Positions 17,033 to 43,765 of a stretch of DNA of 43,765 bases are shown one piece after another. The notes beneath the pieces are model-generated. The model ran no database searches. It was given only the letters and a program-made list of their open reading frames with translations, and was not told the origin of the DNA. The stretch lies in sequence record ON286972.1; one strand, written 5' to 3'. A program made the position numbers and the translations under genes. Position 1 is the stretch's first letter; each line of letters opens with the position of its first letter.

Positions 17033-17034
17033 TT

Positions 17035-30017: not shown

Positions 30018-30400
30018 TGACTTACCGTGATTACTTTTGTATTTTTGAAATTGCAGTATTCGCTTTAGGTTCAGTCTGGTTACTTCTATACTACTTCTGT
30101 ATTAATCCAGTATTCAATTGGGTTCGTCGTGCTGAACAAAGTAGTGCTGGACAAATAGCAGTTGTTATGGGTATGACATATTATATGTTCGCCGTGGCTT
30201 CTGTTGTTATTGAAGTAATATTTGGTGGCATGAATGGTGATGATGGGGCAACGTTCTATGGATTCGTAACATTCTTTAGTGTGCTGATTCCGTGTGGTGC
30301 TCTTATTATTACTGCGTTCTATTGGCTATATCGTGGTGTTAAGAAGCTGGAATCAATTCACGTAGATATGCGTTCAAAACGAATGGGGATTGACAAATAA
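30017..30400 (+). CDS. 3-TM membrane protein (paralog array)
   Basis: YFCINPV; same TM layout. Confidence 0.75.
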   Translation: MTYRDYFCIFEIAVFALGSVWLLLYYFCINPVFNWVRRAEQSSAGQIAVVMGMTYYMFAVASVVIEVIFGGMNGDDGATFYGFVTFFSVLIPCGALIITAFYWLYRGVKKLESIHVDMRSKRMGIDK

Positions 30401-30952: not shown

Positions 30953-30980
30953 AAAAAAGCCCACATTAAGTGGGCTTTTT
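30953..30980. terminator. bidirectional intrinsic terminator
   Basis: AAAAAAGCCCAC-ATTAA-GTGGGCTTTTT between convergent blocks. Confidence 0.9.
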
Positions 30981-30981: not shown

Positions 30982-33006
30982 TTATTTGTGTTTTATGTGT
31001 AAAGTGTCTAATATTGTATTGAACAATGATTTAGCAGAAATCATGATTACTTGATCAAAATCTTTAGTATAAGAAATATTAGCAGTACTGGAAGAATCTT
31101 TCACCTCATCCGGTAATGCATCAAACTCTTCTTTTTCCATAATCTTTTCAAGTTCTTCACGAGAAATGGCTTTTACGTTTTCAATAGTCCTTAGTTGTAT
31201 ATTATAATCTTTATAATACGAAACTAAGTTCGTTGCGTATGAACCATCTTTAGATGCTGTTCCAGTAAAATCATAACATCCTGTATCAGTACTAACCCAA
31301 TCGATTTTCCCTGAACTACCACTATATACACCTTTGTTGAACTTAATGTTAACAACATCACCAATAGTTTTCAATATACCACCTTTACATTCATTAAATG
31401 CGTTTAATTGATAACTTGTAGTCATATAGAATTTCGGTTCTAATGTAACAGTATCACCTACAGTTGCTTTCATATCAGAAACACTTAAGAACAATTCATT
31501 AAATCCTTTTGAATAAGTCTTGGTAATTGTTGTTCCATCCCTGTTAGTTACTGTGTATTCTAAGTCCAATTCACAAATACTATTCAATGATAAGTAAGGG
31601 ATATCAAATTTATCAGTACTAGCATCATAAGGACATCTTGAGGATGGTAGTATACCAGTAGGGTTTGGTACGTATTGAACTTTTGTTAACTCATACCCGC
31701 TTGCATTCGCTGGTGTAACTGTAATAGACGGTGTAGATATTCCTTTCATTCCACAGAAGTATATGTTATCTGGAAAATCATTTATTACGAAGTCAGTGAC
31801 AGGAATATCATAAGTATCTTTATCAGTCCAATTAAGAACAACATTAGAACTGGTTGGATCAACAATATGTTCACTAGAACCACAGAAATATACTGATTTG
31901 GTATTAGTAATCATTAGTAATGTTTTGGATGATGAGTTCAATTCAAGAACATCTTTCACTTCAAGACCAGATGGTAATGTCAATGGTAACTTCGTAAATG
32001 ATGTTAAATCTTGTTCATCTTTAACACCACTAGTCCCCGCCGGAAACTTACCTGAACCATAGAAAACACCTTTATTCGTCATGAAATACATGAACGGGGT
32101 TGATGTTCCTTTGTCAAATAGTTGAATGTCATCACATGTTAAACCATCAGGTAAATCCACTTTAGATGGAGTTCTATAAACACCAGGCTTAATACCACCT
32201 TCACCATTACTTACATCACCTAGTACATATAAATCTTTACCTAGTTTCAAGAACATTGATTTATTTTTAGCACACAAGAATGTATCATATGATTTATCAT
32301 CAATTGGTAGCTTGGTATATTCGGTGTATGTAGGCATTGAATCATCAATCCACGAACTATCACCACTAATGTAAATGTGATTGTTTCTGTCAATATAATA
32401 TGAATACACATCAGTACTGTTCATATATAAAGCATTTAGTGCATTTGTTTTCACTAAGTGATTGAACTTAAGAACTTGTTTTCCATCGTACTTATGGGAG
32501 TTGACACCAATATCACCATTTAGGCTACTACCAATTGAATATATATGACCACGTGGTAATAGAACTTGAACACCACTTTTGGTTAAATTATATTTGGAGT
32601 GCAAGAGATCGTTATATACAACTCTAACTTTCTTAAAGATATCAGTACATTCAATCCACGATTTAGATGGTGTACCATCCATTCCTATTATTGCCGGATC
32701 ACCATAATAATAAGCTTTATTTTCATATGATATTTTAAAAGATGATTTACCATCTTTTGTATTAGCACTGAAGTACACATCTTTACTATCTTTAATTGGA
32801 TAAGTACTATTCTCTACAAAAGTATTATATGAGATATCGTTGTTAGCACTATTAAGAACAAAAGAAGTAGATGTACTATTGGACTTATAGACTGCTACGG
32901 AAGATGTATCACTGAAATCAATTTTAGTGAACGTATCTTTGTATGTTTCGTTTAATAATCCTACATAAAAAACATCAGTGCCATCCATCAGTAACGAATA
33001 TAGCAT
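30982..33006 (-). CDS. RCC1-like beta-propeller protein, 3' part of a frameshifted gene
   Basis: LYVLGDVSNGEGG, FYGSG, YFCGS blades; joins 33919 ORF if 4 nt are removed. Confidence 0.65.
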   Translation of the reverse strand: MLYSLLMDGTDVFYVGLLNETYKDTFTKIDFSDTSSVAVYKSNSTSTSFVLNSANNDISYNTFVENSTYPIKDSKDVYFSANTKDGKSSFKISYENKAYYYGDPAIIGMDGTPSKSWIECTDIFKKVRVVYNDLLHSKYNLTKSGVQVLLPRGHIYSIGSSLNGDIGVNSHKYDGKQVLKFNHLVKTNALNALYMNSTDVYSYYIDRNNHIYISGDSSWIDDSMPTYTEYTKLPIDDKSYDTFLCAKNKSMFLKLGKDLYVLGDVSNGEGGIKPGVYRTPSKVDLPDGLTCDDIQLFDKGTSTPFMYFMTNKGVFYGSGKFPAGTSGVKDEQDLTSFTKLPLTLPSGLEVKDVLELNSSSKTLLMITNTKSVYFCGSSEHIVDPTSSNVVLNWTDKDTYDIPVTDFVINDFPDNIYFCGMKGISTPSITVTPANASGYELTKVQYVPNPTGILPSSRCPYDASTDKFDIPYLSLNSICELDLEYTVTNRDGTTITKTYSKGFNELFLSVSDMKATVGDTVTLEPKFYMTTSYQLNAFNECKGGILKTIGDVVNIKFNKGVYSGSSGKIDWVSTDTGCYDFTGTASKDGSYATNLVSYYKDYNIQLRTIENVKAISREELEKIMEKEEFDALPDEVKDSSSTANISYTKDFDQVIMISAKSLFNTILDTLHIKHK

Positions 33007-33919
33007 TTCTATTATTACATAAAGAAGTAATATTTTTTACTACTTTATTTGAATTATAGTTTGGTAACTTCTTTAATCCACGAACAAAATTATCACAAAT
33101 AATACCAGTACCATAGAAGTTATAATCTTTATCACAGTATATAAATGCTGTATCATATGGTGAAGTACTTAAATTCTTATAGAATGGGAATGGAGTGAAT
33201 GTGAATTGTAGAACCTTACGCAATTCCCCTACTGTCTCTGTTGGGAATTGTCTGTTTTTATTATTACCAATAAAAACAACTCTATCTGTTAGGAATGTGT
33301 ACATAATTCCATATGGTTTTACGTACAAATCATTATATCCCAATGATAATTTAGTTGGTGATGTTAGTGGTCCTGAGTTTATTTTGGTTTGATTAATTGA
33401 AAACTCATTAGAATTATAACCAGCCCCATATGTATTACCATTAGTACTTAAATAATATACAGTAGCTTCCCCTGCTCCAAGAAAAGTCTTTACATCAGTT
33501 GCTAACGTTTTTTGGAAAGTTGGATAAAATTTATTATATGTTCCCGTTCCCATCATCAGTTCACCATTGCGGTTATGACCACGAGCATATAGAATACCTT
33601 TGTCTGTATCTAAGAAGAACATACCATTATATGTTTTGTAAATCTTACCTTTTGTAATATCGAAATTGGAAAAATCATCACTAATATCAATGAATATTGT
33701 CTCAAGATTATCTTCAAGGGAGTTTAGAGATTTACCACAATACCATACTGAGTTATCTTTTTTAACAGCAACACAACCACACGGACTGGCATCAAAATAT
33801 GTTACATCGGAAAGAACCAGAGATAAGTTCTTTGTACTGCAATAGTTATCCATTGCATATAAATCGGAATCTTTAAGTATATATACGGAATTCCCAACCG
33901 CTTTAATCGAATTTATCAT
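32975..33919 (-). CDS. RCC1-like beta-propeller protein, 5' part of a frameshifted gene
   Basis: GAGGA RBS before ATG 33919; LYARGHNRNGEL, TYGAGYNS blades. Confidence 0.7.
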   Translation of the reverse strand: MINSIKAVGNSVYILKDSDLYAMDNYCSTKNLSLVLSDVTYFDASPCGCVAVKKDNSVWYCGKSLNSLEDNLETIFIDISDDFSNFDITKGKIYKTYNGMFFLDTDKGILYARGHNRNGELMMGTGTYNKFYPTFQKTLATDVKTFLGAGEATVYYLSTNGNTYGAGYNSNEFSINQTKINSGPLTSPTKLSLGYNDLYVKPYGIMYTFLTDRVVFIGNNKNRQFPTETVGELRKVLQFTFTPFPFYKNLSTSPYDTAFIYCDKDYNFYGTGIICDNFVRGLKKLPNYNSNKVVKNITSLCNNRNAIFVTDGWH

Positions 33920-33983
33920 GTTTATATCCTCATAAATTGATACCAATTCTAATGTATTTACCCACTTAAAGTACAAAAAATGA

Positions 33984-34140
33984 TCAATTAAATGGGGAAT
34001 CTTTAACAAATGAATTCATGATGTACTTGATGAATTGCCCATACCAACGGATTCCTCAGTCCCAGCATACCACATGGTATTATCGAACTTTTTATCATTG
34101 TAGTATCATAACCACACCAAACATCATCAACATTAGTATT
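33984..34140 (-). pseudogene. decayed relic of a propeller-array gene
   Basis: NTNVDDVWCGYDTTMI / KFDNTMWYAG (1-nt shift) / SFVKDSPFN* resemble blade 1 and C-terminus of neighbours. Confidence 0.7.
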
Positions 34141-35491
34141 ACAACAATTGTATTTCTGTGAGTGTTTGATATGTTGTACCGTTGTACACACCTCTCCAAT
34201 ATACCCTACCTTCAGTACTAACCACTAATAATCCATATGTTGTAAACCCAAGAGTACCACCAACATACATAGCATCTTTAATTCGAATACCAATGTCTTC
34301 ATATGTAAATGAAGCGACTGCTCCCGCTTGCCACGAAGGACTAGCGTAGTAATCACTATAAACACCATGTGCTTTATATATTGATGTTGTTCCTGGTTCA
34401 AAAATTACAGTTCCACAGTAGTTCATTCGTATTTTAGTACTGGATGAAGTCGGTACATTTATACCTATGCCATCTTTTATCCCTGTAGTTAGGACGTTAA
34501 AACCACCCGCCACACGGTTGACGTCATTCTCACCGATTAAAAACATACCAACGTTGTAGCCCATATAATATACACTGCTACTGCCATTCCAGAAAGAAAA
34601 ACCACCACCATTACCACAGCGATATAGTTGTGAATTTGAGCAGTACATCATACCTTCGTTTGTCGCATCAAATTCATCTGCTGTTCCTATTGTAGCTACA
34701 GTAGTCCACGTTTTAATCACTTGGTTTGTACTAGCTGGTGTTTGTATACCATATCGTATATTATATCCCTTACCAACGATTGTACCATCTTCTAATTTAG
34801 CATAAAGTACAGGTCTATTACCAACAAAATACATATTATTGTGTGACATGTCTATTGTGCATCTTAATGAAACTACTTTTTGTGTCAATTGATTATCTTT
34901 AGTAAAAGAAGTAAAGTAGTAATCCGATGTTGAGTTGTTTATTAAACCTTGTATTGACAATCCCATATACCAGATTTCACCATTGCTGTTTAATGCTGCC
35001 AAAATACAACTATATTTTGAAGTGTATGCTGGTGATGTTGTTGAAGTTGCTGGTCCTTTATCATATCCACCACAGAATACCATCTCCACAACTTCACCTA
35101 CGTTCGAAAAATAAGAAGATACATTGATAAAACCATTTGTTATAAAAGGTGCTGTATTCATACTTGAATGTGTGAATATCCCATTTGCATATACACCACA
35201 AAAATGATATGAACCATCATTATCTTGGACTATTATTCCATTTGATAGTAACCAAAAATTGTTTACATTTTTTCTTACTAATTCAACTCCTGCACCATTG
35301 GTTGGTGTTATACCAAAAGAAACATATTTTGTTTGACCAATACCATATAAATTTCCATTAGTTGCTAGTATTGCACCAAACCAGTTCCCACCACCATTCC
35401 TATCATGACCCATACCAATGGAGTCAAATTTCTTCACAGTAGGGACTTCAACTTTATTCCCATACTCTAGCATTCTAACAAAAGGTAACAT
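34139..35491 (-). CDS. MLPFVRM-leader RCC1-like beta-propeller protein (450 aa)
   Basis: true start at MLPF with AAGGAGG RBS; LYGIG, IWYMG, VYWRG blades. Confidence 0.85.
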   Translation of the reverse strand: MLPFVRMLEYGNKVEVPTVKKFDSIGMGHDRNGGGNWFGAILATNGNLYGIGQTKYVSFGITPTNGAGVELVRKNVNNFWLLSNGIIVQDNDGSYHFCGVYANGIFTHSSMNTAPFITNGFINVSSYFSNVGEVVEMVFCGGYDKGPATSTTSPAYTSKYSCILAALNSNGEIWYMGLSIQGLINNSTSDYYFTSFTKDNQLTQKVVSLRCTIDMSHNNMYFVGNRPVLYAKLEDGTIVGKGYNIRYGIQTPASTNQVIKTWTTVATIGTADEFDATNEGMMYCSNSQLYRCGNGGGFSFWNGSSSVYYMGYNVGMFLIGENDVNRVAGGFNVLTTGIKDGIGINVPTSSSTKIRMNYCGTVIFEPGTTSIYKAHGVYSDYYASPSWQAGAVASFTYEDIGIRIKDAMYVGGTLGFTTYGLLVVSTEGRVYWRGVYNGTTYQTLTEIQLL

Positions 35492-35555
35492 ATATCCTCC
35501 TTTATTCATTATATTATATTTAATCAAAAAAGAAAAGCCAGTACAGAGTACTGGC
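35460..35555 (-). repeat. array junction repeat 1 (hairpin, T-tract, TAAATA, RBS, leader codons)
   Basis: GCCAGTAC-TCT-GTACTGGC TTTTCTTTTTTGATTAAATATAATATAATGAATAAAGGAGG..ATGTTACCTTTTGTTAGAATG. Confidence 0.95.
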
Positions 35556-35566
35556 ATTTAAAATAA

Positions 35567-36742
35567 TCAAAATGTAGGAAGTTTGAATTCTCTCATAACA
35601 GATGAACTGCTTGCAGATACATTATCTGGTGATTTCCCTGCGTAGTATAATTTATTATCAATGAACATATACAATGTTGCATCATTTCCTGCTACAAGTG
35701 ATTCACTTTTCTTAAATTTAACACCACTAGGTAAAATTGCTTCAACAAATGAACCTGATTCTCTTGTAGTATTATTTGCCAATTGACCATTGTTATTATA
35801 ACCAGTACTATAAATTTTACCTGAACTATAATATACGAGTCCACGAGTACTAGTGTTTTCTATTCGAATGAATTCACTATCATCTGGGACTGTAGTTGAT
35901 AGAACTGGGTTTAACTTATAAGCAGATGATACATTATTATTACCCAATTGACCATAACCTTGAAAGCCTAGTGTATACATAGGACATGATTCTGGTGTGC
36001 CTTTTGTTATAATACCAATATAATTCACACTACAAAAAATGTCTATTGCTTCTGTAATAGGTGTACCCTTATATTGAACCCAAGGGAATACATACGATTG
36101 TTGCTTACCATTTCCCAAAGTACCGGAAGTTGTTGTCCCAGTACGCCACATTGTATCATCAAGTTTAATAATCCAGTTAGCTGTCGTTATCGATGAACAG
36201 AATTTTTTAACATTATCCACTAAAAATGTAAATTGATTATAATATGATGCAGTGTTTATACCAAACTTAGCACCAGTATTATCACCTAACAAATATAAAC
36301 TATTATCTGTACCTAAAATCAAAGCATAATCATAACCCACGTATATATCTTTAATTCTTGAAATTCCAAATTGTGTAAAATAGCTTGTACATTCTGTGAA
36401 TGTTGTTATATTATTGGTTGTATTATTACCTAGCCATTTATCTAAACCACTATAAAAGAATCTATCATCATTTGTGCGTATTAGACAAAAAGCGTTCATT
36501 GTACTGCACCAAAAATCTTTAACATTGCTATATATTTTTGTCCATTCAGTTACTGCATTAGTATGACCTAAACCAAAAATTCCACCATTCTGAAGACCAA
36601 TAGCCCATATTGAACCATTTTTATCAAGCATCATTGTACATGTATGTGAATAACCACCCGATGGTGTAACTAATTTAACAAAATTGGGAATATATGGTAA
36701 AACTTTATTTCCATAATCCAACATTCTAACAAAAGGTAACAT
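35567..36742 (-). CDS. MLPFVRM-leader RCC1-like beta-propeller protein (391 aa)
   Basis: IWAIGLQNGGIFGLG, YTLGFQGYGQLGN, YSTGYNNNGQLAN. Confidence 0.9.
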   Translation of the reverse strand: MLPFVRMLDYGNKVLPYIPNFVKLVTPSGGYSHTCTMMLDKNGSIWAIGLQNGGIFGLGHTNAVTEWTKIYSNVKDFWCSTMNAFCLIRTNDDRFFYSGLDKWLGNNTTNNITTFTECTSYFTQFGISRIKDIYVGYDYALILGTDNSLYLLGDNTGAKFGINTASYYNQFTFLVDNVKKFCSSITTANWIIKLDDTMWRTGTTTSGTLGNGKQQSYVFPWVQYKGTPITEAIDIFCSVNYIGIITKGTPESCPMYTLGFQGYGQLGNNNVSSAYKLNPVLSTTVPDDSEFIRIENTSTRGLVYYSSGKIYSTGYNNNGQLANNTTRESGSFVEAILPSGVKFKKSESLVAGNDATLYMFIDNKLYYAGKSPDNVSASSSSVMREFKLPTF

Positions 36743-36809
36743 AATTCCTCCTTTATTCATTATACTATATTTAATCAAAAAAGAAATGCCAGCATCAAGT
36801 ACTGGCATT
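36710..36809 (-). repeat. array junction repeat 2
   Basis: same unit, hairpin with one mismatch. Confidence 0.95.
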
Positions 36810-36813
36810 ATTG

Positions 36814-38004
36814 TTATAGTTGTCTTGGTGTATCAAGTACATATCTATTTGTACTAGGACCACCATCATCATACGTTCCGGTTGAATATATATTTTTCAT
36901 ATCAGCAGTTAGAAAAGTACGATACGAACCGCGATATATTTTTATTTTATCATACATAGAATATGATATTTCTGCTGGCATTGGACATATAGTAAATCTA
37001 CCAATAGTAACATTAGAACCAACACCCAACGAACCAGCATAACTACTCGCATTTAAACCAGTTGCATATACACCAGTACTCGTAACTAGTATACTAGATT
37101 GTGTTGGGTATCCTGTATGAATTGAATACAAAGTTCCAGTTGGTAATGTCGTACTATTGCTCCCTAATACAGCAAGTGCCGAACTGGTTGTGGTATTGTT
37201 ACCCCATGCACCATTACTCGCTAAACCACCAACTAGAAACTGACGTGCACCAGTACTTGGATTCTCAACCAAAGCACTGACTGCACCACTTGAGCATCCA
37301 GTGTATTGTAACGTTTTTGTGTATGTTGTACTTGGTTTATATAAAGTATATTCATTAAATGGTGTCCATGTGGTACTGGTACTTATACCTGACGTACCAC
37401 CACCAATATATAAATTATTTTGTGTATCAAAAAACATTACACAGTTATTTGTTGACTGTATTTGTGCAATATCAACATTAGGCGTGACAGCTTTTACAAA
37501 TGATCCATCTGTTATTTGTTGAGTACTACCAGTACCATCAGCGAATTGTCTAGCCCCACTCCAACCAGTACTCCATATTGTATTATTATCCATTAATACC
37601 GTAAACCACGTAGTACCTCCATACATCTGTTTAATTGAAGTACTTGAACTTTGCGTGTACAAATTTTCAATATATTGGTTATAACTTAAAAACGTAGTAG
37701 TACTAGTTGGTAAACCAATATGATCACCATATCCACAATAAAAATAATTTGAGTCATTATCTTGTACTAACAAAGTTCCTTGTGACACCCAGAAATCTTT
37801 AACATTTTCTCTAATTAAGGTCCATGACTTTACTGCATTACTATTTCCTATACCAAACTTCCCAAAACTATTATTTCCACGTGCGTATAGTTGACCATCC
37901 GTATAAAGAACGACAACATCTAAATCAGTTGGTGTTATTTTCTTAATTTGAATAGGGACTGGTGTTATATTCCCATAATCAAACATTCTAACAAAAGGTA
38001 ACAT
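36814..38004 (-). CDS. MLPFVRM-leader RCC1-like beta-propeller protein (396 aa)
   Basis: LYARGNNSFGKFGIG, VYATGLN..GSLGVG. Confidence 0.9.
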   Translation of the reverse strand: MLPFVRMFDYGNITPVPIQIKKITPTDLDVVVLYTDGQLYARGNNSFGKFGIGNSNAVKSWTLIRENVKDFWVSQGTLLVQDNDSNYFYCGYGDHIGLPTSTTTFLSYNQYIENLYTQSSSTSIKQMYGGTTWFTVLMDNNTIWSTGWSGARQFADGTGSTQQITDGSFVKAVTPNVDIAQIQSTNNCVMFFDTQNNLYIGGGTSGISTSTTWTPFNEYTLYKPSTTYTKTLQYTGCSSGAVSALVENPSTGARQFLVGGLASNGAWGNNTTTSSALAVLGSNSTTLPTGTLYSIHTGYPTQSSILVTSTGVYATGLNASSYAGSLGVGSNVTIGRFTICPMPAEISYSMYDKIKIYRGSYRTFLTADMKNIYSTGTYDDGGPSTNRYVLDTPRQL

Positions 38005-38069
38005 ATTTCCCTCCTTTATTCATTATACTATATTTAATCAAAAAAGAAAAGCCAGTATCAAGTACTGGC
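37972..38069 (-). repeat. array junction repeat 3
   Basis: same unit; hairpin 38051-38069. Confidence 0.95.
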
Positions 38070-38075
38070 CTATAT

Positions 38076-39245
38076 TTAAACTGGTGAATCTAATACAAAT
38101 TCTAAACTACTAATGCCACCATATGTGACATTTGTCCCTGTGCTATATACAAAATTACCATCAGTTATATAAGTTCGGTTATACCCACCTGCCATCTGCG
38201 ACTTACTATAATCAAACCCATCAGGAACGATTGCTTTGGTATATACTAATGCATTATTAGATGTACCAATACCTAACATACCAGCTCCTGAAGATTTATT
38301 GTAGCCGCAACAATATATACCATCTGTTGTAGCAATAACTTGGTTATAATATGAAGTAATGTTAGCAATGCTTACTACATCACCGGGTGGCATTAGTGAA
38401 GCAGTTTGAACCTCAAATGCTCTATAATCACTGAGAGAACCATTTATCCCATCTGCTTGTGCACCAAATATTCTCGAACCGCCATTTGCGATGATGGTTT
38501 TACCAGTGGGATCAGTACCAATTGCCATTGCCATTGAAGTACTATTCTCCATATAGTACTTGATATTAATTGTATTTCTTAAGCTGGTAGGAGCACCATA
38601 ATATATAGTATATAACTTACCTCCTGAACTTGTAACTGCATTTACTCTTCCTGTATAAAATAGCCATCCTTGGTTTGTAACATAACCGTGCATTAAATTA
38701 CTTGCAAACAATTTAACAGGTAATTGATCTGCTGCGGTCGGAACAGTACTTTTGACGAATTTTCTAGCAACATTGTTAGTTGTTGTCCCATCACCCAACT
38801 GACCATCACCCCCTGCTCCAGTACTCCATATTGTTTGGTCTGTTAGTAATACACTTGTAGTCTGATAACTAACTGCTATATCTAATATTGGTAATGTTAA
38901 CGTATCGAATGTTGGCATAGCAGAAGTCCATATTGATACTGCTGCCCCTGGCATACCAACAGTTGTTGAACTTCCACTGTACCATATTTCATCATTGCTT
39001 TTCTTAATAACTATCGACGTGGCTCCCATCCAAAAATCTTGAACATCAGAAGTGCTAAAAGTCCATGTAGTAACAATATTTTTGTGACCTAAACCCAAAA
39101 GACCATTTGTATTCTCACCACGCACATATAAATCACCACTGTTTGTTAAAACAGCAACATTATAGTTGTTAGCTAGTATTTTTTTAATATTTGGTTTAGC
39201 AGGTGCAATATTCCCATACTCTAACATTCTTACAAAAGGTAACAT
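38076..39245 (-). CDS. MLPFVRM-leader RCC1-like beta-propeller protein (389 aa)
   Basis: LYVRGENTNGLLGLG, IWSTGAGGDGQLGDG. Confidence 0.9.
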   Translation of the reverse strand: MLPFVRMLEYGNIAPAKPNIKKILANNYNVAVLTNSGDLYVRGENTNGLLGLGHKNIVTTWTFSTSDVQDFWMGATSIVIKKSNDEIWYSGSSTTVGMPGAAVSIWTSAMPTFDTLTLPILDIAVSYQTTSVLLTDQTIWSTGAGGDGQLGDGTTTNNVARKFVKSTVPTAADQLPVKLFASNLMHGYVTNQGWLFYTGRVNAVTSSGGKLYTIYYGAPTSLRNTINIKYYMENSTSMAMAIGTDPTGKTIIANGGSRIFGAQADGINGSLSDYRAFEVQTASLMPPGDVVSIANITSYYNQVIATTDGIYCCGYNKSSGAGMLGIGTSNNALVYTKAIVPDGFDYSKSQMAGGYNRTYITDGNFVYSTGTNVTYGGISSLEFVLDSPV

Positions 39246-39309
39246 AATTCCTCCTTTATTCATTATATTATATTTAATCCAAATAAGAAAGCCAGTATCA
39301 AGTACTGGC
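39210..39309 (-). repeat. array junction repeat 4
   Basis: same unit; hairpin 39291-39309. Confidence 0.95.
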
Positions 39310-39315
39310 ATTGTG

Positions 39316-40425
39316 TTATTTCGGTAAATCAATTTTAGTAAAGACTGCAACATCCTCGCTTGCACCGGGAATGGCGTAATACGTTCCAGTACTATATACA
39401 TCTCCATTTTTGGTTAATATTGAAGTCAAACCATCACTAAAAAGAACATCCCTAATCTCACTAACTTCAACGGGTAATTGTAAATTTGTAGCACTATATA
39501 TAGCACCAGTTTGAGAATTGTTTAATCCCAAACCACGGTTCGCCCCAACACCCTTCTGATATGTACTGGTAATTACCATTTGTGTAGCAGTATTTAATGC
39601 AGGTGAATTCGTCATAAACAACGGAGAACTATTAGGCAAAGTACTTACAGGAACTGCACGGAATGTAGTCGTACCTGAACTAAGAAAGTTTGGAGTTTGA
39701 CCACATACGAAATATGATGTACCATTATAGTAATTAAATGCATTACCACCAATCGCTGCATCGATTACACCAGAACTACGTAATCCCCAAGTGTTAATTT
39801 GTGTTTGGTCCCCTGTACCATGCTGCCCACTGCTATTCCATCCAGAACTATATAGCTTATTATCTAATGTAATATACATACTATCATTTGCATTAGTCAT
39901 TACTTTACGCACGTTAGTAGCACATTGAGTTAATGTGTAAATCGATGATGAGCCAATACCTAAAGAACCACGATATCCATTATCTCCTGCACCATAGAGT
40001 ACTGAACTAGTGCTAAGTACAAATATTAAACCATTTGTACATACAATATTAGCAATTTCACTCACTGGTATAGCATTGGTAAACCAATTAGTCCTTTCAA
40101 CTAATATAGTACTGTAAGAAGTAGTTGTAGAAGATGAGAACCAGTACGTTTCACCCGATGTCCATATCGTATTATCATTTTTAATAATAACAAGTGTACG
40201 ACCACCCACGAAAAAATTAGAAACATCTGAACTTACTAATATCCATGAAGATACCGTGTTGTTATTACCATTTCCAGATTCACCACCTTGATTTCTACCT
40301 ATGTAATATAAATCATGTGAATCAGTCAATAAGAATTGACCCTGTGTAGAAGCACCAACTTTAATTATATTTTTAGGACCGGGTACAATATTCCCGTACA
40401 CTAACATTCTTCCAAAAGGTAACAT
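39316..40425 (-). CDS. MLPF-leader RCC1-like beta-propeller protein (369 aa)
   Basis: LYYIGRNQGGESGNG, LYSSGWNSSGQHGTG. Confidence 0.9.
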   Translation of the reverse strand: MLPFGRMLVYGNIVPGPKNIIKVGASTQGQFLLTDSHDLYYIGRNQGGESGNGNNNTVSSWILVSSDVSNFFVGGRTLVIIKNDNTIWTSGETYWFSSSTTTSYSTILVERTNWFTNAIPVSEIANIVCTNGLIFVLSTSSVLYGAGDNGYRGSLGIGSSSIYTLTQCATNVRKVMTNANDSMYITLDNKLYSSGWNSSGQHGTGDQTQINTWGLRSSGVIDAAIGGNAFNYYNGTSYFVCGQTPNFLSSGTTTFRAVPVSTLPNSSPLFMTNSPALNTATQMVITSTYQKGVGANRGLGLNNSQTGAIYSATNLQLPVEVSEIRDVLFSDGLTSILTKNGDVYSTGTYYAIPGASEDVAVFTKIDLPK

Positions 40426-40490
40426 AATTCCTCCTTTATTCATTATACTATATTTAATACAAAAAAGAAAAGCCAGTACTCTGTACTGGC
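40390..40490 (-). repeat. array junction repeat 5
   Basis: same unit; hairpin 40472-40490. Confidence 0.95.
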
Positions 40491-40498
40491 ATATTACA

Positions 40499-41641
40499 TT
40501 ATTTCCACGGTAGAAGTGAATCAGGAACTCTGGTTGGTACTCTAACGGCTGGAACATTTCCAAGTTCAGGTAAACCACTCATATACAAATTGTTATTTTC
40601 ATCAATTATCATTGAATAGAAATTATCAATTACGAAGCCTGAAATTCGTCTTCCTTCTAATGCATCAAGAACCATTTCGGTGAAAGTTAGTATATTTTCG
40701 GATGTTTGATTAACACCACATGCACCATAGGTATTTCGACCACAAGTATATAACTTATTATTATTTTTAACAACACATCCATTCCCTTCGTTGTTGGATA
40801 AACCACCCACCAACTCTATTTCACCTTGGAATGATAAATTGGGAATTAATGTACTCATTGGTACTGCTGATACTGTACCTACACCAGCTTGACCATATGC
40901 ATTTGGTGAAGCAACCTTCACTGAACCATCATTAAGAAATATATATGAAGTACGGTATGTATTTACAGCTTGTATAGCATTGGTGATAGTATTGTCTTTT
41001 GTAAAACTTAATATATTTGATGTTTTTGTACTACCAGGAGCAACAGTATTTCCTGCATACCAATAGGAGCCATCATCAAGTACTAACCCAGTACTGAGCA
41101 AAGAACAGCCATAACTTTTAACATTTTCTATAGTGCTGTATCTGAACGATGTGACATTAGCTGTTGACGCGTTACCAAATACACCACCTTCGCCAGAACC
41201 ACAGTAGAACCATTTTCCATTTTTTAAAAATACACGCAAATTCTGCCCAACAGCAATACCATCAATATCATCAGCACTGACACCAAAATCAGTGAAGTAC
41301 TGGGTTACATCAATCCAAACCCCATTTGTATTTGTTCCGATTTGTGGCATTACTATACTAGCACCTGTGAACCAAATAGTTCCATCATTCTTAATGGCAA
41401 TGGAACCAAGAACACCACCCCAGTAACGTTCAATATTATTATTCACACGGGTCCATACGGTGGATGATTGTAATGAACCATTACCACCTTGTCCAAATGA
41501 AGATGAACCATACCAGTACAAGTCACCATTAACATGCAAATAAAAACGAGTATTATAATTTGCTTGTAATCTATTTTTAAATAGAGGTTTTGGTTCCGGT
41601 GCAATATTCCCGTACTCTAACATTCTAACAAAAGGTAACAT
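40499..41641 (-). CDS. MLPFVRM-leader RCC1-like beta-propeller protein (380 aa)
   Basis: LYWYGSSSFGQGGNG, LYTCGRNTYGACGV. Confidence 0.9.
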   Translation of the reverse strand: MLPFVRMLEYGNIAPEPKPLFKNRLQANYNTRFYLHVNGDLYWYGSSSFGQGGNGSLQSSTVWTRVNNNIERYWGGVLGSIAIKNDGTIWFTGASIVMPQIGTNTNGVWIDVTQYFTDFGVSADDIDGIAVGQNLRVFLKNGKWFYCGSGEGGVFGNASTANVTSFRYSTIENVKSYGCSLLSTGLVLDDGSYWYAGNTVAPGSTKTSNILSFTKDNTITNAIQAVNTYRTSYIFLNDGSVKVASPNAYGQAGVGTVSAVPMSTLIPNLSFQGEIELVGGLSNNEGNGCVVKNNNKLYTCGRNTYGACGVNQTSENILTFTEMVLDALEGRRISGFVIDNFYSMIIDENNNLYMSGLPELGNVPAVRVPTRVPDSLLPWK

Positions 41642-41710
41642 AATTTCCTCCTTTATTCATTATACTATATTTAATACAAATAAGAAATGCCAGTACTCTG
41701 TACTGGCATT
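41600..41710 (-). repeat. array junction repeat 6
   Basis: same unit; 11-bp stem 41686-41710. Confidence 0.95.
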
Positions 41711-41713
41711 ATA

Positions 41714-42856
41714 TTATTTCCACGGTAGAAGTGAATCAGGAACCCTTGTCGGTACATTTGTAGTAGACACCCCATCAAGATTTGGTACACCGCATGTATA
41801 TAAATTATCAGCATCGTCAACTAACATCGTATAGTTATATCCCCTACAAAAACTACTAACATTACGACCTTCTAATGCAGTAAGAATCATTTCAGTGAAT
41901 GTTGTTATATTTGTCGAGGTTGAACCAACACCACATTGTCCATTTGAATTAAGACCACATAAAAATAACTTATTATCATTTTTAATTATACAGGATGGTC
42001 CAGTAAGGTTTGTACCAAGCTCACCCACTAACTCTATTTCACCTTGGAATGCTAAATTTGGAATTAATGTACTCATAGGGGCTGGTGTTGTATTCCCAGT
42101 ACCTGCTTGACCACGTTCGTTGGAAGATGCAACTTTAACTGTTCCATCACTAAGAAATATATAGGAAGTTTCAATTGTATTGACTGCTTTAATTGCAGTG
42201 CTGATAGAAGTTTCTTGTGTAAATCTTAGCACGTTTTGTGCTGACGTTCCCGATATAAACGTATTACCTGCATACCAATATGTACCATCATTGAGTACTA
42301 ATGCAGTACTTCGAATTGCACAACCAGCACTTCGAACATTTTCTATAGTACTGTACGTGAATTGTGAAACGCTTGCCGATGAACCATTTCCGAATACACC
42401 ACCACTCCCAGCACCACAGAAGAACCACTTTCCATTTTTCAAAAATACACGCATACACGCAGATATAACAATACTATCAATATCATCAGCACTGACACCG
42501 AAATCAGCAAAGTGCGATGTCACATCAACCCAAACACCGTTAGTGTTTGATGCAATTACTGGAATAACAGAACTTGTACCAGTGTACCAAATAGTACCAT
42601 CTTTCTTTATCGCTATTGTTCCTTGAACACCACCCCAATATCGTACAACATTTGTATTGACGAGAGTCCATGCGGTTGAAGAGTTCAATGAACCATTACC
42701 ACCTTGACCATATGATGAAGAACCAAACCAATATAGATTACCATTGGTGTGTAAATAAAATTTGGCATCTGCCGAGCATTGTAACCTATTTTTTAATCGT
42801 GGTGCGGGTTCCGGTGCAATATTCCCGTACTCTAACATTCTAACAAAAGGTAACAT
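41714..42856 (-). CDS. MLPFVRM-leader RCC1-like beta-propeller protein (380 aa), close paralog of 40499 gene
   Basis: same length, identical first 17 and last 12 residues. Confidence 0.9.
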   Translation of the reverse strand: MLPFVRMLEYGNIAPEPAPRLKNRLQCSADAKFYLHTNGNLYWFGSSSYGQGGNGSLNSSTAWTLVNTNVVRYWGGVQGTIAIKKDGTIWYTGTSSVIPVIASNTNGVWVDVTSHFADFGVSADDIDSIVISACMRVFLKNGKWFFCGAGSGGVFGNGSSASVSQFTYSTIENVRSAGCAIRSTALVLNDGTYWYAGNTFISGTSAQNVLRFTQETSISTAIKAVNTIETSYIFLSDGTVKVASSNERGQAGTGNTTPAPMSTLIPNLAFQGEIELVGELGTNLTGPSCIIKNDNKLFLCGLNSNGQCGVGSTSTNITTFTEMILTALEGRNVSSFCRGYNYTMLVDDADNLYTCGVPNLDGVSTTNVPTRVPDSLLPWK

Positions 42857-42868
42857 AATTCCTCCATA

Positions 42869-43765
42869 TTATTTAAAAACATACTGCGTATTAACACGAG
42901 TGCCATTGTCAAAACCAAGTACATAAAATATCTCAGCACTATTCTTAGAACCAAATAACGCACCAGTACTACTACTCAAAGTAGTATTAACCGCTAAGGG
43001 AATCCATATGTCTTCTTCTGCATCGTATCTCAATAAATTTAATGCACCATACGACACTGCATATATATTTTTATCATATGTACTGTAACATATTTTACTA
43101 GGGTTATTACCACCAACTGGTGCTATGTTAGACCACACCGCACTTTGTATATGATATTTTTGTGCAGTACTAGTACCTTGACCAGTAATATATATGTAAG
43201 TACCATCCGTACACATATCACCACCTCCATTGTTATTTGTTCCATCACTTGTACCTAATGATGACCATGTATTAGTACTTGGAGTATAACTGTATAACGA
43301 ATTATTAGTAGGCGAACCCCACAAATATATCTTATCCCCAGCAGTAATCATCTTACTATACGCCAGTTGACTAGGCTTCCCAATACTGTTAGTGTTCAGA
43401 ATCCATGTATTTGTACTTATATTATATACATAAAAATTATTACTACTATTACCTGAACCACCAAACAAATATATTTTTCCCTGATAAGCACATAACGCAC
43501 TACCAAATGTAGATACAGGTGCATTGGCTAATTGTGACCACGTTCTTGTAGTTAAATTAAAACTCCATAACTGATTATCCGTCTGCACCGCATTCTGTAT
43601 ACCACCAAATATATAAGCAATATTACTTTCCGCATCATACGTATAACCAAAGTTATTTCGTGCTGAAGGTACTGGTGATGTAGTAAATTGTGTTCGTACT
43701 CCACCATTTGGGCCAGGTAATGGACCTACATTCCCGAACTCAAACATTCTTACAAAAGGTAACAT
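42869..43765 (-). CDS. MLPFVRM-leader Kelch-repeat beta-propeller protein (298 aa)
   Basis: YIFGG, IYLFGG, LWSFNLTTRTWSQL, YVYNISTNTW Kelch motifs; ATG is the last codon of the window. Confidence 0.9.
   Translation of the reverse strand: MLPFVRMFEFGNVGPLPGPNGGVRTQFTTSPVPSARNNFGYTYDAESNIAYIFGGIQNAVQTDNQLWSFNLTTRTWSQLANAPVSTFGSALCAYQGKIYLFGGSGNSSNNFYVYNISTNTWILNTNSIGKPSQLAYSKMITAGDKIYLWGSPTNNSLYSYTPSTNTWSSLGTSDGTNNNGGGDMCTDGTYIYITGQGTSTAQKYHIQSAVWSNIAPVGGNNPSKICYSTYDKNIYAVSYGALNLLRYDAEEDIWIPLAVNTTLSSSTGALFGSKNSAEIFYVLGFDNGTRVNTQYVFK

What the first reader, a model, noticed from the sequence alone, without database searches (positions are those of the whole stretch)
42856..43765. Same leader grafted onto a different fold (Kelch), at the one junction lacking the hairpin
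Seen: the last gene has MLPFVRMFEFGN followed by Kelch repeats rather than RCC1-like repeats. Simple whole-gene duplication cannot explain the shared leader, so the leader is a mobile module. The 42856/42869 junction is only 12 nt with no hairpin, but TAAATA is still present overlapping the stop codon. Inference: TAAATA is the conserved promoter core, and these two genes are co-transcribed.
Basis: partly seen in the sequence, partly recalled or inferred. Interest (0 to 1): 0.7.

Follow-up and report, generated by a model that had tools for sequence, protein, structure and literature searches.

The report
Shared address tag on jumbo-phage virion proteins
A 12-residue N-terminal tag (MLPFxR..xYGN) is shared by structurally unrelated proteins of Rak2-like jumbo phages, many of them found in virions; it most likely directs them into or onto the virion, and in this phage it sits inside a repeated terminator-promoter-ribosome-site DNA cassette.

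Summary
The window is the last 43.8 kb of Escherichia phage A4 (Asteriusvirus, a Rak2-like jumbo phage).

**Observation: confirmed.**
- The minus-strand gene 43765..42869 starts MLPFVRMFEFGN and continues as a six-bladed Kelch propeller.
- Seven downstream genes start with nearly the same 12 residues and are seven-bladed RCC1-like propellers.
- Apart from the leader, the two kinds of body share no detectable similarity.

**What the leader is.**
- It is not a recent graft. Kelch orthologues in Pectobacterium phage CBB and Erwinia phage Hallingskeid already carry it.
- In relatives and metagenomes the same tag heads Kelch, RCC1-like, LamG-lectin and RCC1+Kelch fusion proteins, plus several unassigned families.
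- Published virion mass spectrometry (CBB, phAPEC6) detects many of these proteins, and CBB peptides cover tag residues 7-20. The tag is therefore retained, unlike the T4 capsid-targeting sequence.
- AlphaFold models place it on a disordered N-terminal stalk.
- Tag variants track the genome rather than the gene, which indicates concerted evolution.

**Promoter and junction.**
- TAAATA is the most depleted hexamer in the window. It lies upstream of genes and matches a late promoter already predicted in the literature.
- At the 12-nt junction, TAAATA is made by the codons Phe-Lys-stop and sits in a different register. It is probably a by-product.
- Co-transcription of the Kelch gene with the next gene is likely but untested.

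The parts
42869..43765 (-). Kelch-repeat gene (A4_245, 298 aa): 12-residue tag, about 12-residue low-confidence linker, six-bladed propeller
   Evidence: ORF and translation. Pfam Kelch E=1e-24. AlphaFold2 pLDDT 89.6, with residues 1-10 at pLDDT 51. Top Foldseek PDB hits are six-bladed Kelch domains, TM about 0.75. Annotated as kelch-like protein in ON286972.1.
43730..43765 (-). Leader/tag codons of the Kelch gene (MLPFVRMFEFGN)
   Evidence: Pattern match. Its promoter and ribosome-binding part of the cassette continues in the record's first ~50 nt, outside the window.
42857..42868 (-). 12-nt intergenic junction TATGGAGGAATT with Shine-Dalgarno GGAGGA (42860-42865); no hairpin
   Evidence: Sequence. 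No terminator called. No excess folding, z=+0.47. The same 12-nt junction occurs in Turkey5 and BF17.
42870..42875 (-). TAAATA overlapping the Kelch stop codon, formed by the codons TTT-AAA-TAA plus TA; probably not a promoter
   Evidence: It lies 13 nt from the ATG versus 25 nt in the cassettes of this window. It is absent at the short junctions of Hallingskeid and CBB and at Turkey5's other short junctions.
41714..42856 (-). First RCC1-like gene (A4_244, 380 aa), tag MLPFVRMLEYGN at 42821-42856; likely second cistron of a Kelch-RCC1 transcript
   Evidence: Pfam RCC1/WD40_RLD. AlphaFold2 pLDDT 85.9, with residues 1-19 below 50. Top Foldseek hits are UVR8, the HERC2 RCC1-like domain and RCC1, TM about 0.77.
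41642..41713 (-). Cassette 1: terminator hairpin 41686-41710 plus T-run, TAAATA 41668-41673, TATAAT-like box, AAAGGAGG ribosome-binding site
40499..41641 (-). RCC1-like gene A4_243 (tag at 41606-41641)
   Evidence: Its body is 98.6% identical in DNA to the 121Q orthologue while the leader matches at only 30/36 nt.
40426..40498 (-). Cassette 2: hairpin 40472-40490, TAAATA 40451-40456
39316..40425 (-). RCC1-like gene A4_242 (tag MLPFGRMLVYGN at 40390-40425)
39246..39315 (-). Cassette 3: hairpin 39291-39309, TAAATA 39271-39276
38076..39245 (-). RCC1-like gene A4_241 (tag at 39210-39245)
38005..38075 (-). Cassette 4: hairpin 38049-38071, TAAATA 38031-38036. A further TAAATA at 38073-38078 overlaps the upstream stop codon.
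36814..38004 (-). RCC1-like gene A4_240 (tag at 37969-38004)
36743..36813 (-). Cassette 5: hairpin 36785-36809, TAAATA 36768-36773
35567..36742 (-). RCC1-like gene A4_239 (tag at 36707-36742)
35492..35566 (-). Cassette 6: hairpin 35537-35555, TAAATA 35517-35522
34139..35491 (-). Divergent tagged paralogue A4_238 (450 aa; tag at 35456-35491). No Pfam hit, but BLASTP links it to the RCC1-like paralogues.
   Evidence: PHROG 4219, E=2e-16.
30982..33919 (-). Two leaderless, weakly RCC1-like genes (A4_237 at 32975-33919; A4_236 at 30982-32988), preceded by GGGTAAATAC at 33955-33960

Best explanation
The Kelch gene is a long-standing member of a multi-fold family of late-expressed accessory virion proteins found in Rak2-like jumbo phages.

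**Protein architecture.** Each family member has three parts:
- a 12-residue N-terminal tag, M-[L/I]-P-F-x-R-h-h-x-Y-G-N;
- a short stretch of low predicted order;
- a globular, probably ligand-binding head: an RCC1-like or Kelch propeller, a LamG/ConA-like lectin, or another fold.

**Proposed function of the tag (inferred).** The tag works as a peptide that addresses or anchors these unrelated heads to one common partner in the virion. It remains on the mature protein.

**Concerted evolution.** Within each genome all copies of the tag share a genome-specific variant, across unrelated folds. The cause could be co-evolution with a shared partner, short-tract gene conversion, or both.

**The DNA cassette.** In Asteriusvirus the tag codons are the 3' end of a repeated DNA cassette of roughly 85-110 nt. 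It comprises an intrinsic terminator hairpin with T-run, a TAAATA late-promoter core, an AAAGGAGG ribosome-binding site and the first 12 codons. This gives most genes their own late transcription unit. It also supplies homology for shuffling, duplication and loss of whole genes, in the manner of PeSL cassettes.

**The Kelch junction.** Kelch and the next RCC1-like gene lack an intervening cassette. They are most likely transcribed together from the promoter upstream of Kelch and terminated at hairpin 41686-41710. The TAAATA at their junction is most likely a by-product of the codons Phe-Lys-stop.

**Shown versus inferred.**
- Shown: the shared tag, the different folds, concerted evolution of the tag, the cassette anatomy, the depletion and placement of TAAATA, and virion presence with tag retention in relatives (published mass spectrometry).
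- Inferred: the docking function, the late timing of expression, co-transcription and cassette-mediated recombination.
For: **The tag is shared across unrelated folds**
- The window has 8 leader genes against 0 expected.
- CBB_536, 537, 548, 549, 550, 551, 552, 553 and 554 all begin MLPF....
- An IMG/VR scan found the motif in contigs of 348-378 kb; the only other contig, of 49 kb, held a 13-codon chance match. The metagenome scan added many more.
- Pfam assigns the bodies to RCC1, Kelch, LamG_3 and RCC1+Kelch fusions; some remain unassigned.
- Kelch and RCC1-like bodies are unrelated. The models are six-bladed versus seven-bladed.
- Cellular Kelch relatives lack the tag.

**Selection acts on the peptide**
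- M1, P3, F4, R6, Y10, G11 and N12 are invariant across 20 RCC1-like proteins whose bodies share only five invariant glycines.
- Codons at these positions vary synonymously: CCT/CCA/CCG, TAC/TAT, GGG/GGA/GGT, AGA/AGG.

**The tag sits on a disordered N-terminal extension**
- pLDDT is 51 for residues 1-10 of the Kelch model and below 50 for residues 1-19 of the RCC1-like model.

**Virion association and retention**
- phAPEC6 mass spectrometry finds eight proteins of its RCC1-like clusters (six named DNA condensation protein) in virions.
- CBB mass spectrometry finds CBB_536, 537, 548, 549, 551, 552 and 553.
- CBB peptides LFEYANVIIPPNYK, YANVIVEYATK and LLQYGNK lie within the tag-linker region.

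**Concerted evolution**
- A4 gene 40499-41641 matches its 121Q orthologue at 986/1000 nt in the body but only 30/36 in the leader, and each carries its own genome's variant.
- Leader identity averages 9.64/12 for same-genome, different-fold pairs against 8.21/12 for different-genome, same-fold pairs. None of 2000 permutations reached the observed value.

**Cassette and promoter**
- Alignment of the upstream regions.
- Six terminators called at the six long junctions, with folding z-scores of -1.9 to -4.3.
- 403 copies of the cassette in 42 phage records.
- TAAATA is the most depleted of 982 hexamers (18 vs 85). In my reading, 12 of the 18 copies lie within about 60 nt upstream of an ORF start on the same strand.
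- [G/T]TAAATA is conserved upstream of leader clusters across genera.
- It was published as a predicted late promoter, including upstream of CBB_552, 553 and 537.

**Shuffling**
- The order of orthologous genes differs among A4, Turkey5 and 121Q.
- The same Kelch-plus-junction-plus-leader unit is joined to a different downstream body in BF17.
- The locus is syntenic with CBB, next to a DUF1190 gene, but holds different cargo.
Against: - No experiment shows what the tag binds or where these proteins sit in the virion.
- The mass spectrometry comes from relatives (CBB, phAPEC6), not from A4. The direct CBB orthologue of this Kelch gene (CBB_550) was not detected; only the paralogue CBB_552 was.
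- The peptides show that residues 7 onward are retained. Whether residues 1-6 remain is unknown.
- Concerted evolution could come from gene conversion alone, with no shared partner.
- No transcription start or end has been mapped in any Asteriusvirus that I could find. "Late promoter" and "co-transcribed" therefore rest on sequence logic and analogy with T4.
- Because TAAATA is so strongly purged elsewhere, its survival at the junction in three phages might still reflect function.
Confidence: 0.65

Rival explanations
1. The tag is a capsid-targeting signal like the T4 CTS. The tagged propellers and lectins would then be internal head (inner-body or ejection) proteins, delivered into the host with the DNA and perhaps acting as anti-defence binders, rather than external adhesins.
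For: - The concept matches T4 internal proteins: diverse cargo sharing only a conserved N-terminal targeting sequence (PMC3012670).
- phAPEC6 has an inner body whose proteins are unassigned, and its authors suggested the RCC1-like proteins for that role.
- The family is highly polymorphic among close relatives, as expected for arms-race genes.
Against: - Tag residues 7-20 are found in mature CBB virion peptides, so the tag is not removed the way the T4 CTS is.
- LamG/ConA-like lectin folds, and Kelch bodies closest to proteins annotated as N-acetylneuraminate mutarotase (some carrying PF18962), point to extracellular carbohydrate or surface binding.
- phAPEC6 also has unassigned external "hairy" fibres on capsid and tail.
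Confidence: 0.15
2. Conservation of the leader acts on the nucleic acid only, as a translation-initiation region or a recombination site. Under this reading the encoded peptide has no function of its own.
For: - In Asteriusvirus the leader is contiguous with a non-coding cassette that is roughly 90% identical or more between copies, repeated 4-16 times per genome.
- Short conversion-like tracts are visible.
Against: - Across genera the DNA diverges while the peptide is kept. Synonymous codon variation occurs at P3, F4, R6, Y10, G11 and N12.
- In CBB and Hallingskeid most leader genes have 8-15 nt junctions with no repeated cassette, yet they keep the peptide.
Confidence: 0.07
3. The junction TAAATA (42870-42875) is a working internal late promoter, so the RCC1-like gene 41714-42856 also has its own transcript.
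For: - TAAATA is the most strongly avoided hexamer in the window.
- It is nevertheless kept at this junction in A4, Turkey5 and BF17.
Against: - It lies 13 nt from the ATG, against 25 nt in the cassettes here and roughly 24-34 nt in other genera. A T4-like start about 6 nt downstream would fall inside the GGAGG.
- The hexamer is dictated by the conserved C-terminal Phe-Lys-stop.
- EJP2 ends the gene with Phe-Thr-TAG and has a full cassette instead.
- Other short junctions (Turkey5 9 and 10 nt, Hallingskeid 10 nt, CBB 8 nt) lack it.
- TAAATA at 38073-38078 also overlaps a stop codon directly in front of a terminator.
Confidence: 0.15
4. The Kelch gene is a highly diverged RCC1-like paralogue produced by whole-gene duplication, so the shared leader is simply inherited.
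For: - Both are beta-propellers in one tandem array.
- hhalign gives 49% probability.
Against: - In the hhalign alignment only the leader columns are confident, and BLASTP gives E>=0.19 without the leader.
- The Kelch body hits Kelch models at 1e-24 and cellular Kelch proteins. Its fold is six-bladed Kelch, against seven-bladed RCC1/UVR8 for the neighbour.
- The only link between the two groups in clustering is a two-domain RCC1+Kelch fusion protein.
- The leader also heads LamG lectins.
Confidence: 0.02

Closest known systems
T4 internal-protein capsid targeting sequence (CTS)
   Same: A short conserved N-terminal peptide is the only feature shared by an otherwise diverse, polymorphic set of phage proteins, and it directs them into the virion (PMC3012670).
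   Different: As I recall it, the CTS is removed by the prohead protease and its cargo lies inside the head. Here tag residues 7-20 are present in mature virion peptides, and the location in the virion is unknown. From memory the two sequences are unrelated; I did not compare them. The cargo here is 200-690 aa propellers and lectins, not small basic proteins.
PeSL (promoter-early stem-loop) mobile regulatory cassettes of T4-type phages
   Same: A composite terminator stem-loop plus promoter, repeated between non-core genes of a hyperplastic locus, supplies homology for insertion, deletion and shuffling of whole genes (PMC2839356 and PMC4122927). In A4 the six cassettes separate the array genes, and gene order and content differ among close relatives.
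   Different: PeSLs carry strong sigma-70-type early promoters and stop before the coding sequence. This cassette has a TAAATA late-type core with no -35 box at a proper spacing, and it extends through the ribosome-binding site into the first 12 codons. Mini-circles and crossover points were not tested here.
T4-type late promoter (TATAAATA) and the ATAAATA motif predicted in CBB and GAP32
   Same: A TAAATA core lies 25-35 nt upstream of the start codons of virion-protein genes in the window. It is strongly avoided elsewhere. The CBB authors list the same motif upstream of CBB_537, 552 and 553.
   Different: In the cassettes only 6 of the 8 T4 consensus positions match (ATTAAATA). A perfect TATAAATA occurs at 20086-20093. 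No transcription start mapping exists, and the CBB authors found no gp33 or gp45 homologues.
Conserved N-terminal anchor modules of multi-tailspike or depolymerase phages (e.g. CBA120/Vi01-like, Klebsiella jumbo phages); from my own knowledge, not tested here
   Same: The logic is modular: a conserved N-terminal attachment part plus interchangeable C-terminal binding parts, encoded in tandem arrays.
   Different: Those anchors are folded domains of roughly 100 residues or more on trimeric beta-helix spikes. Here the shared part is a 12-residue peptide on what appear to be monomeric propellers or beta-sandwiches.

Membership tests
Kelch-repeat beta-propeller proteins | Kelch motif or domain matches above the Pfam gathering scores | tested here: met
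   PF24681 87.6 bits (cut-off 50), Kelch_6 71.5 (25.3), Kelch_1 62.6 (20.1).
Kelch-repeat beta-propeller proteins | Six-bladed propeller fold | tested here: met
   AlphaFold2 pLDDT 89.6, pTM 0.88. Top Foldseek PDB hits are six-bladed Kelch domains (NS1-BP, KLHDC10, LZTR1, Keap1), TM 0.64-0.78, E about 1e-14.
Phage RCC1-like paralogue family (PHROG 4219), as a home for the Kelch gene | Sequence or profile similarity of the body to the RCC1-like paralogues | tested here: not met
   BLASTP E>=0.19 after leader removal. PHROG 12615 rather than 4219. hhalign 49% probability, confident only in the leader. Seven-bladed versus six-bladed models.
MLPFxR..xYGN-tagged virion protein set of Rak2-like phages (defined here) | The motif sits at residue 1 of the ORF, preceded by a ribosome-binding site | tested here: met
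   The same holds for 79 proteins in 11 genomes and for the metagenome hits.
MLPFxR..xYGN-tagged virion protein set of Rak2-like phages (defined here) | The protein is present in purified virions | not testable with these tools
   There are no proteomic data for A4. Relatives: seven tagged CBB proteins, including the Kelch protein CBB_552, and eight phAPEC6 proteins of the RCC1-like clusters. The direct orthologue CBB_550 was not detected.
T4 CTS-type capsid-targeting leaders | A short N-terminal peptide shared by otherwise unrelated virion proteins | tested here: met
T4 CTS-type capsid-targeting leaders | The leader is removed from the mature protein by the prohead protease | tested here: not met
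   Published CBB virion peptides cover tag residues 7-20, 10-20 and 7-13. The fate of residues 1-6 is unknown.
T4 CTS-type capsid-targeting leaders | The cargo lies inside the capsid | not testable with these tools
   No localisation data exist.
PeSL mobile regulatory cassettes | A composite stem-loop terminator plus promoter, repeated between genes of a variable locus | tested here: met
   Six cassettes in the window and 403 copies in 42 records.
PeSL mobile regulatory cassettes | A sigma-70-type early promoter (-35 and -10 boxes) | tested here: not met
   The sigma-70 scan shows no enrichment (61 found vs 70.6 expected) and no strong (10 of 12) hit in the cassettes. A TATAAT box is present without a -35 box at 16-18 nt, and the core is TAAATA.
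PeSL mobile regulatory cassettes | Recombination between cassettes causes gene gain, loss and shuffling | tested here: inconclusive
   The evidence is indirect: a different order of orthologues in A4, Turkey5 and 121Q; the same Kelch-junction-leader unit joined to another body in BF17; and a divergent patch confined to the leader in 98.6%-identical orthologues. Crossover points and mini-circles were not observed.
T4-type late promoters | A TATAAATA-like element alone, at about -10, upstream of late or structural genes | tested here: inconclusive
   The TAAATA core is present, depleted elsewhere and conserved. It matches 6 of 8 consensus positions in the cassettes. No transcription start data are available.
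T4-type late promoters | The phage encodes a gp55-like late sigma factor | not tested
   The CBB paper reports a gp55-like protein, CBB_244. I did not look for it in A4. The window does encode a sigma-70-family protein at 8174-9136.

The most novel reading that the evidence does not exclude
The 12-residue tag is a universal plug. It docks a shuffling repertoire of ligand-binding heads (RCC1-like and Kelch propellers, LamG lectins, fusions) onto one receptor site of the still-unassigned "hairy" fibres that decorate the capsid and tail of Rak2-like jumbo phages. This would form a combinatorial adhesin display. The genome-specific tag variants would then reflect co-evolution with that docking site. 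The terminator-promoter-ribosome-site-tag cassette would be the recombination device that lets any new head be installed in one step.
Probability: 0.3. Interest if true: 0.8.

Novelty: new variant of a known kind. Interest (0 to 1): 0.58.

Why it matters
- **Re-reading existing annotations.** Databases label these genes "regulator of chromosome condensation" or "DNA condensation protein". The phAPEC6 authors suggested they help order the packaged DNA, possibly in the inner body. A shared, retained N-terminal tag on propellers and lectins instead points to one delivery or anchoring system for interchangeable binding modules.
- **A testable handle.** If correct, a 12-25 residue peptide could be tested for loading foreign proteins onto or into jumbo-phage virions. 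It would also give a way to identify the unassigned hairy appendages of phAPEC6 and CBB.
- **An evolutionary example.** The tag evolves in concert across unrelated folds, and the regulatory cassette reaches into the coding sequence, which extends the PeSL idea.
- **What is not new.** The promoter part was already predicted in the literature.

Tried and rejected
1. **T4-CTS-like cleavage at (M/L)-x-E within the tag.** Rejected. Position 9 varies (E/D/K/Q/V), and CBB virion peptides span it.
2. **The tag as the propeller's closing ("velcro") strand.** Rejected. It has low pLDDT and lies outside both propellers, and it also heads non-propeller LamG proteins.
3. **Covalent attachment through the invariant Asn12 (isopeptide).** Not supported. 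Unmodified peptides containing that Asn were identified.
4. **Signal peptide or lipoprotein.** I see no hydrophobic core or lipobox cysteine in the tag sequences; no predictor was run.
5. **The upstream in-frame "MPVL.TGFSFLIKYNIMNKGG" extension listed by the ORF finder.** This is simply the hairpin-promoter cassette read in frame. The annotated starts are the MLPF ATGs behind the ribosome-binding site.
6. **A sigma-70 promoter in the cassette.** A TATAAT box exists but has no -35 box.
7. **Single-linkage clustering that merged Kelch with RCC1.** The merge was traced to an RCC1+Kelch fusion protein, not to body homology.
8. **Literature searches.** Searches for the tag strings and for RCC1/jumbo phage/virion found no description of the tag. 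The Asteriusvirus genome papers I opened (fEgEco12, UE-S1, Sharanji) do not discuss it.
9. **tRNA scan of the window.** None found.
10. **The one IMG/VR hit outside jumbo contigs (L011).** It is a 13-codon ORF, so a chance match. About ten metagenome hits were similarly short chance ORFs.


Full report
**Source and layout.** The window is identical to the last 43,765 nt of Escherichia phage A4 (ON286972.1, 355.5 kb, Asteriusvirus, a Rak2-like jumbo myovirus). The genes in the finding lie on the minus strand. The Kelch gene (A4_245) runs 43765..42869 and is the first gene of a leftward array. It is followed by seven genes annotated "putative DNA condensation protein" (A4_244 to A4_238) and two leaderless relatives. 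The window stops exactly at the Kelch ATG. Its upstream region is the start of the GenBank record, which reads ...TTTTCTTTTTTGATTAAATATAGTATAATGAATAAAGGAGGAAAT-ATG. That is the T-run, TAAATA and ribosome-binding part of the cassette found before the other genes; the sequence where the consensus hairpin would sit is different. Phage BF17, whose record is circular, has a closely similar upstream sequence.

**Checking the observation.**
- All eight genes begin MLPF[V/G]RM[L/F][E/D/V][Y/F]GN. A degenerate DNA pattern for this peptide matches 8 times against 0.00 expected.
- The first gene hits Kelch models (PF24681 E=1e-24). Six of the others hit RCC1/WD40_RLD models. The seventh, A4_238, has no Pfam hit but is linked to them by BLASTP and by PHROG 4219.
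- Six junctions of 70-75 nt have the layout stop codon, GCCAGTAC-loop-GTACTGGC hairpin, T-run, GATTAAATATAGTATAATGAATAAAGGAGGAATT, ATG. All six hairpins are called as intrinsic terminators on the coding strand. The junction sequences fold better than shuffles, with z from -1.9 to -4.3.
- The Kelch-to-RCC1 junction (42857-42868) is 12 nt, TATGGAGGAATT. No terminator is called there and folding shows z=+0.47.
- TAAATA lies at 42870-42875 and overlaps the TAA stop codon.

**Is the Kelch protein a diverged RCC1-like paralogue?** No.
- With the 12 leader residues removed, BLASTP between the Kelch body and every RCC1-like body gives E>=0.19. The RCC1-like bodies link to one another, although most pairs are only 21-33% identical.
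- A profile-profile comparison of a Kelch alignment with an RCC1-like alignment gives 49% probability, and only the leader columns are confident.
- The AlphaFold2 Kelch model (pLDDT 89.6, pTM 0.88) matches six-bladed Kelch domains such as NS1-BP, KLHDC10, LZTR1 and Keap1.
- The AlphaFold2 model of the neighbouring gene (pLDDT 85.9, pTM 0.85) matches the seven-bladed propellers UVR8, the HERC2 RCC1-like domain and RCC1.
- The closest cellular relatives of the Kelch body include proteins annotated as N-acetylneuraminate mutarotase. They start with signal peptides or other domains, never with the leader.

**The leader is old and heads many folds.**
- Full-length Kelch orthologues occur in only four other Escherichia phages: Turkey5, EJP2, BF17 and vB_Ec-M-J.
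- More distant orthologues (36-37% identity) occur in Pectobacterium phage CBB (CBB_550) and Erwinia phage Hallingskeid. Both start with the tag (MLPFPRLIEYGN and MIPFARMLQYGN). In Hallingskeid the Kelch gene again heads an array of at least seven tagged RCC1-like genes.
- In CBB nine genes begin MLPF...: CBB_536, 537, 548, 549, 550, 551, 552, 553 and 554. They comprise three Kelch proteins, two LamG_3 lectin-like proteins and four proteins with no Pfam assignment.
- A pattern scan of IMG/VR hit 18 loci on nine contigs. Eight are jumbo contigs of 348-378 kb; the ninth hit is a 13-codon chance ORF.
- A metagenome scan added dozens more.
- Overall the tag heads RCC1-like, Kelch and LamG_3 proteins, RCC1+Kelch fusions of 667 and 690 aa, and several unassigned families.

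It does not support a recent graft in A4.

**What kind of module is it?**
- In a 20-sequence alignment of RCC1-like members, M1, P3, F4, R6, Y10, G11 and N12 are invariant, while the whole ~370-residue body has only five invariant glycines.
- Across 96 distinct leader DNAs these residues are encoded by varying synonymous codons: CCT/CCA/CCG/CCC, TAC/TAT, GGG/GGA/GGT, AGA/AGG/CGN. Selection therefore acts on the peptide. One caveat: the search motif fixed several of these positions, though not R6.
- Both models leave the tag unstructured and outside the propeller. pLDDT is 51 for residues 1-10 of the Kelch model and below 50 for residues 1-19 of the RCC1-like model. Residues 13-25 are rich in Ile, Val, Pro and Lys (Pro 11%).
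- Published virion proteomes contain these proteins. In phAPEC6 eight proteins of the RCC1-like clusters were detected, six of them named DNA condensation protein. In CBB, proteins 536, 537, 548, 549, 551, 552 and 553 were detected.
- In the CBB peptide table I found LFEYANVIIPPNYK (CBB_536, residues 7-20), YANVIVEYATK (CBB_548, residues 10-20) and LLQYGNK (CBB_553, residues 7-13). The tag is thus retained in mature particles, at least from residue 7 onward.

That argues against a cleaved T4-CTS-type signal. It fits a permanent anchor or address peptide on a flexible stalk. This function is inferred, not shown.

**Concerted evolution.** Tag variants follow the genome, not the gene.
- A4 mostly has VRMLEYGN, Turkey5 has VRLFDYGN, 121Q has ARMVKYGN, Hallingskeid has MIPFARMIQYGN and CBB has MLPFPRL.EY. 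One soil contig carries MIPFARI[S/V]KYGN on five different body families.
- A4 gene 40499-41641 and its 121Q orthologue match at 986/1000 nt in the body but at only 30/36 in the leader, and each carries its own genome's variant.
- Mean leader identity is 9.64/12 for same-genome, different-fold pairs against 8.21/12 for different-genome, same-fold pairs. None of 2000 label permutations reached the observed value.

Possible causes are short-tract gene conversion, co-evolution with a common partner, or both. In genomes where most junctions are 8-15 nt and no repeated cassette exists (Hallingskeid, CBB), co-evolution seems the simpler explanation.

**The DNA cassette.**
- In Asteriusvirus the tag codons are the 3' end of a repeated block. 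An 81-nt query (T-run to codon 12) finds 403 places in 42 phage records, 4-16 per Asteriusvirus genome, with weaker matches in Salmonella Munch-like phages and Klebsiella phage fENko-Kae01.
- The order of orthologous genes differs among A4, Turkey5 and 121Q.
- The Kelch-plus-12-nt-junction-plus-leader unit is joined to a different downstream body in BF17. EJP2 has a full 78-nt cassette at that position instead.
- The whole locus lies next to a DUF1190 gene both in A4 (30400-30951) and in CBB (CBB_547), but it carries different cargo in the two phages.

This behaviour resembles the PeSL terminator-promoter cassettes that mediate modular shuffling in T4-type phages (PMC2839356, PMC4122927). It differs in two ways: the promoter is of the late type, and the repeat extends into the coding sequence. 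Recombination at the cassette is inferred from these patterns and was not observed directly.

**TAAATA.**
- It occurs 18 times on both strands against 85.5 +/- 8.5 expected.
- It is the single most under-represented of the 982 hexamers with an expectation of 30 or more (O/E 0.21). The maximal-order Markov expectation is 57.6.
- In my reading, 12 of the 18 copies lie within about 60 nt upstream of an ORF start on the same strand. One of them is a perfect TATAAATA at 20086-20093.
- In other genera, [G/T]TAAATA followed by an ATA-rich box recurs about 24-34 nt upstream of the start codon before leader-gene clusters, while the surrounding sequence differs.
- The CBB authors had already predicted (A/C/G)TAAATA as a T4-like late promoter of structural genes. 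Their list includes the sites upstream of CBB_537, 552 and 553.

"TAAATA is the conserved promoter core" is therefore well supported and already in the literature, although no transcription start has been mapped.

**The junction copy of TAAATA is a different matter.**
- It ends 13 nt from the ATG, against 25 nt in every cassette of this window. A T4-like start about 6 nt downstream would fall inside GGAGG.
- It is spelled by the conserved codons TTT-AAA-TAA (Phe-Lys-stop) in A4, Turkey5 and BF17.
- EJP2 ends the gene with Phe-Thr-TAG and has no TAAATA at the stop.
- The short Kelch junctions of Hallingskeid (10 nt) and CBB (8 nt) lack it, as do Turkey5's other short junctions (9 and 10 nt).
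- Another TAAATA (38073-38078) also overlaps a stop codon, immediately in front of a terminator hairpin, where a promoter would serve no purpose.

I therefore read the junction copy as a coding by-product (about 0.8) and keep an internal promoter as a minor rival (0.15).

**Co-transcription.** Co-transcription of the Kelch gene and gene 41714-42856, ending at hairpin 41686-41710, is the straightforward inference. Short operon-like junctions are the norm for this family in other genera.

**Where the proteins act.** This is the weakest part of the argument.
- The phAPEC6 authors proposed a DNA-condensing role for the RCC1-like proteins, possibly in the inner body.
- The same paper describes unassigned "hairy" fibres on the capsid and at three rings on the tail. 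CBB has similar whiskers that are also unassigned.
- The fold repertoire (lectin-like beta-sandwiches, Kelch bodies related to annotated sialic-acid mutarotases, RCC1-like propellers), the retained tag and the rapid turnover make external binding heads the more likely reading to me. An internal ejection-protein role in the style of T4 internal proteins cannot be excluded.

**Comparison with the known, and novelty.**
- The closest known systems are the T4 CTS, the PeSL cassettes, the T4-type late promoter and N-terminal anchor modules of multi-spike phages.
- The defining features that failed are cleavage for the CTS and an early sigma-70 promoter for PeSL. The system therefore works like each in part but is a member of neither.
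- I found no paper that mentions the tag. The CBB paper lists only BLASTP-detectable paralogue pairs.
- I rate it a new variant of a known kind. The promoter element is already known, and the Kelch and RCC1 annotations are already in the GenBank records.

Noticed in passing
whole window: After TAAATA, the most depleted hexamers all contain GATC (AGATCA, ATGATC, TGATCA; O/E 0.30-0.33). This suggests avoidance of Dam or GATC-directed restriction sites.
   Followed up: no
window 20086-20093 (+): A perfect T4-type late promoter octamer, TATAAATA, lies 46 nt upstream of the 512-aa ORF 20140-21678. That ORF has no Pfam hit.
   Followed up: partly
window 38073-38078 (-): A second TAAATA overlaps a stop codon (gene 38076-39245) and sits directly upstream of a terminator hairpin. 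It shows that this hexamer can occur at a stop codon without a plausible promoter role.
   Followed up: yes
window 33920-34138 (-): The 219-nt spacer after the last tagged gene seems to hold a decayed RCC1-like blade (KFDNTMWYAGTEESVGMGN, interrupted by a stop). tblastn gives E about 6e-4 against the paralogues. It points to gene birth and death in the array.
   Followed up: partly
window 8174-9136 (+): A phage-encoded sigma-70-family protein (Pfam Sigma70_r2 and r3). The Sharanji paper calls a phage-encoded RpoD sigma factor a hallmark of this group of jumbo phages.
   Followed up: no
window 30400-30951 (+) and 30954-30980: A DUF1190 gene converges on the RCC1-like array, and a strong hairpin with T-runs on both sides lies between them. 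The same DUF1190 neighbour (CBB_547) flanks the tagged-gene cluster in CBB, so this is a syntenic variable locus.
   Followed up: partly
window cassettes, e.g. 40426-40498 (-): In the minimum-energy folds, the terminator's U-tract pairs with the AAAGGAGG ribosome-binding site downstream. Read-through RNA might therefore be translated less well than RNA started at the cassette promoter. This is speculative.
   Followed up: no
L012:6413-8416(-) = L051:7528-9531(-); L057:11752-13824(-): Soil-metagenome jumbo-phage contigs encode tagged proteins of 667 and 690 aa with a C-terminal Kelch propeller. In L012/L051 the N-terminal part is a clear RCC1-like propeller.
   Followed up: partly
L017 (121Q), reverse-strand positions 8486-8692; L026:7106-7216; L030:320-430: Truncated ORFs of 36-68 codons still carry a full cassette and tag. 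They are probably remnants of decayed array members.
   Followed up: no
L005 (Turkey5) 5581-20867: Turkey5 carries two tag variants side by side: VRLFDYGN/VRMFDYGN on most genes and A/TRMVKY[G/A]N on four. Two of those four have 121Q orthologues at 82-93% identity, which suggests recent import of cassettes by recombination.
   Followed up: partly
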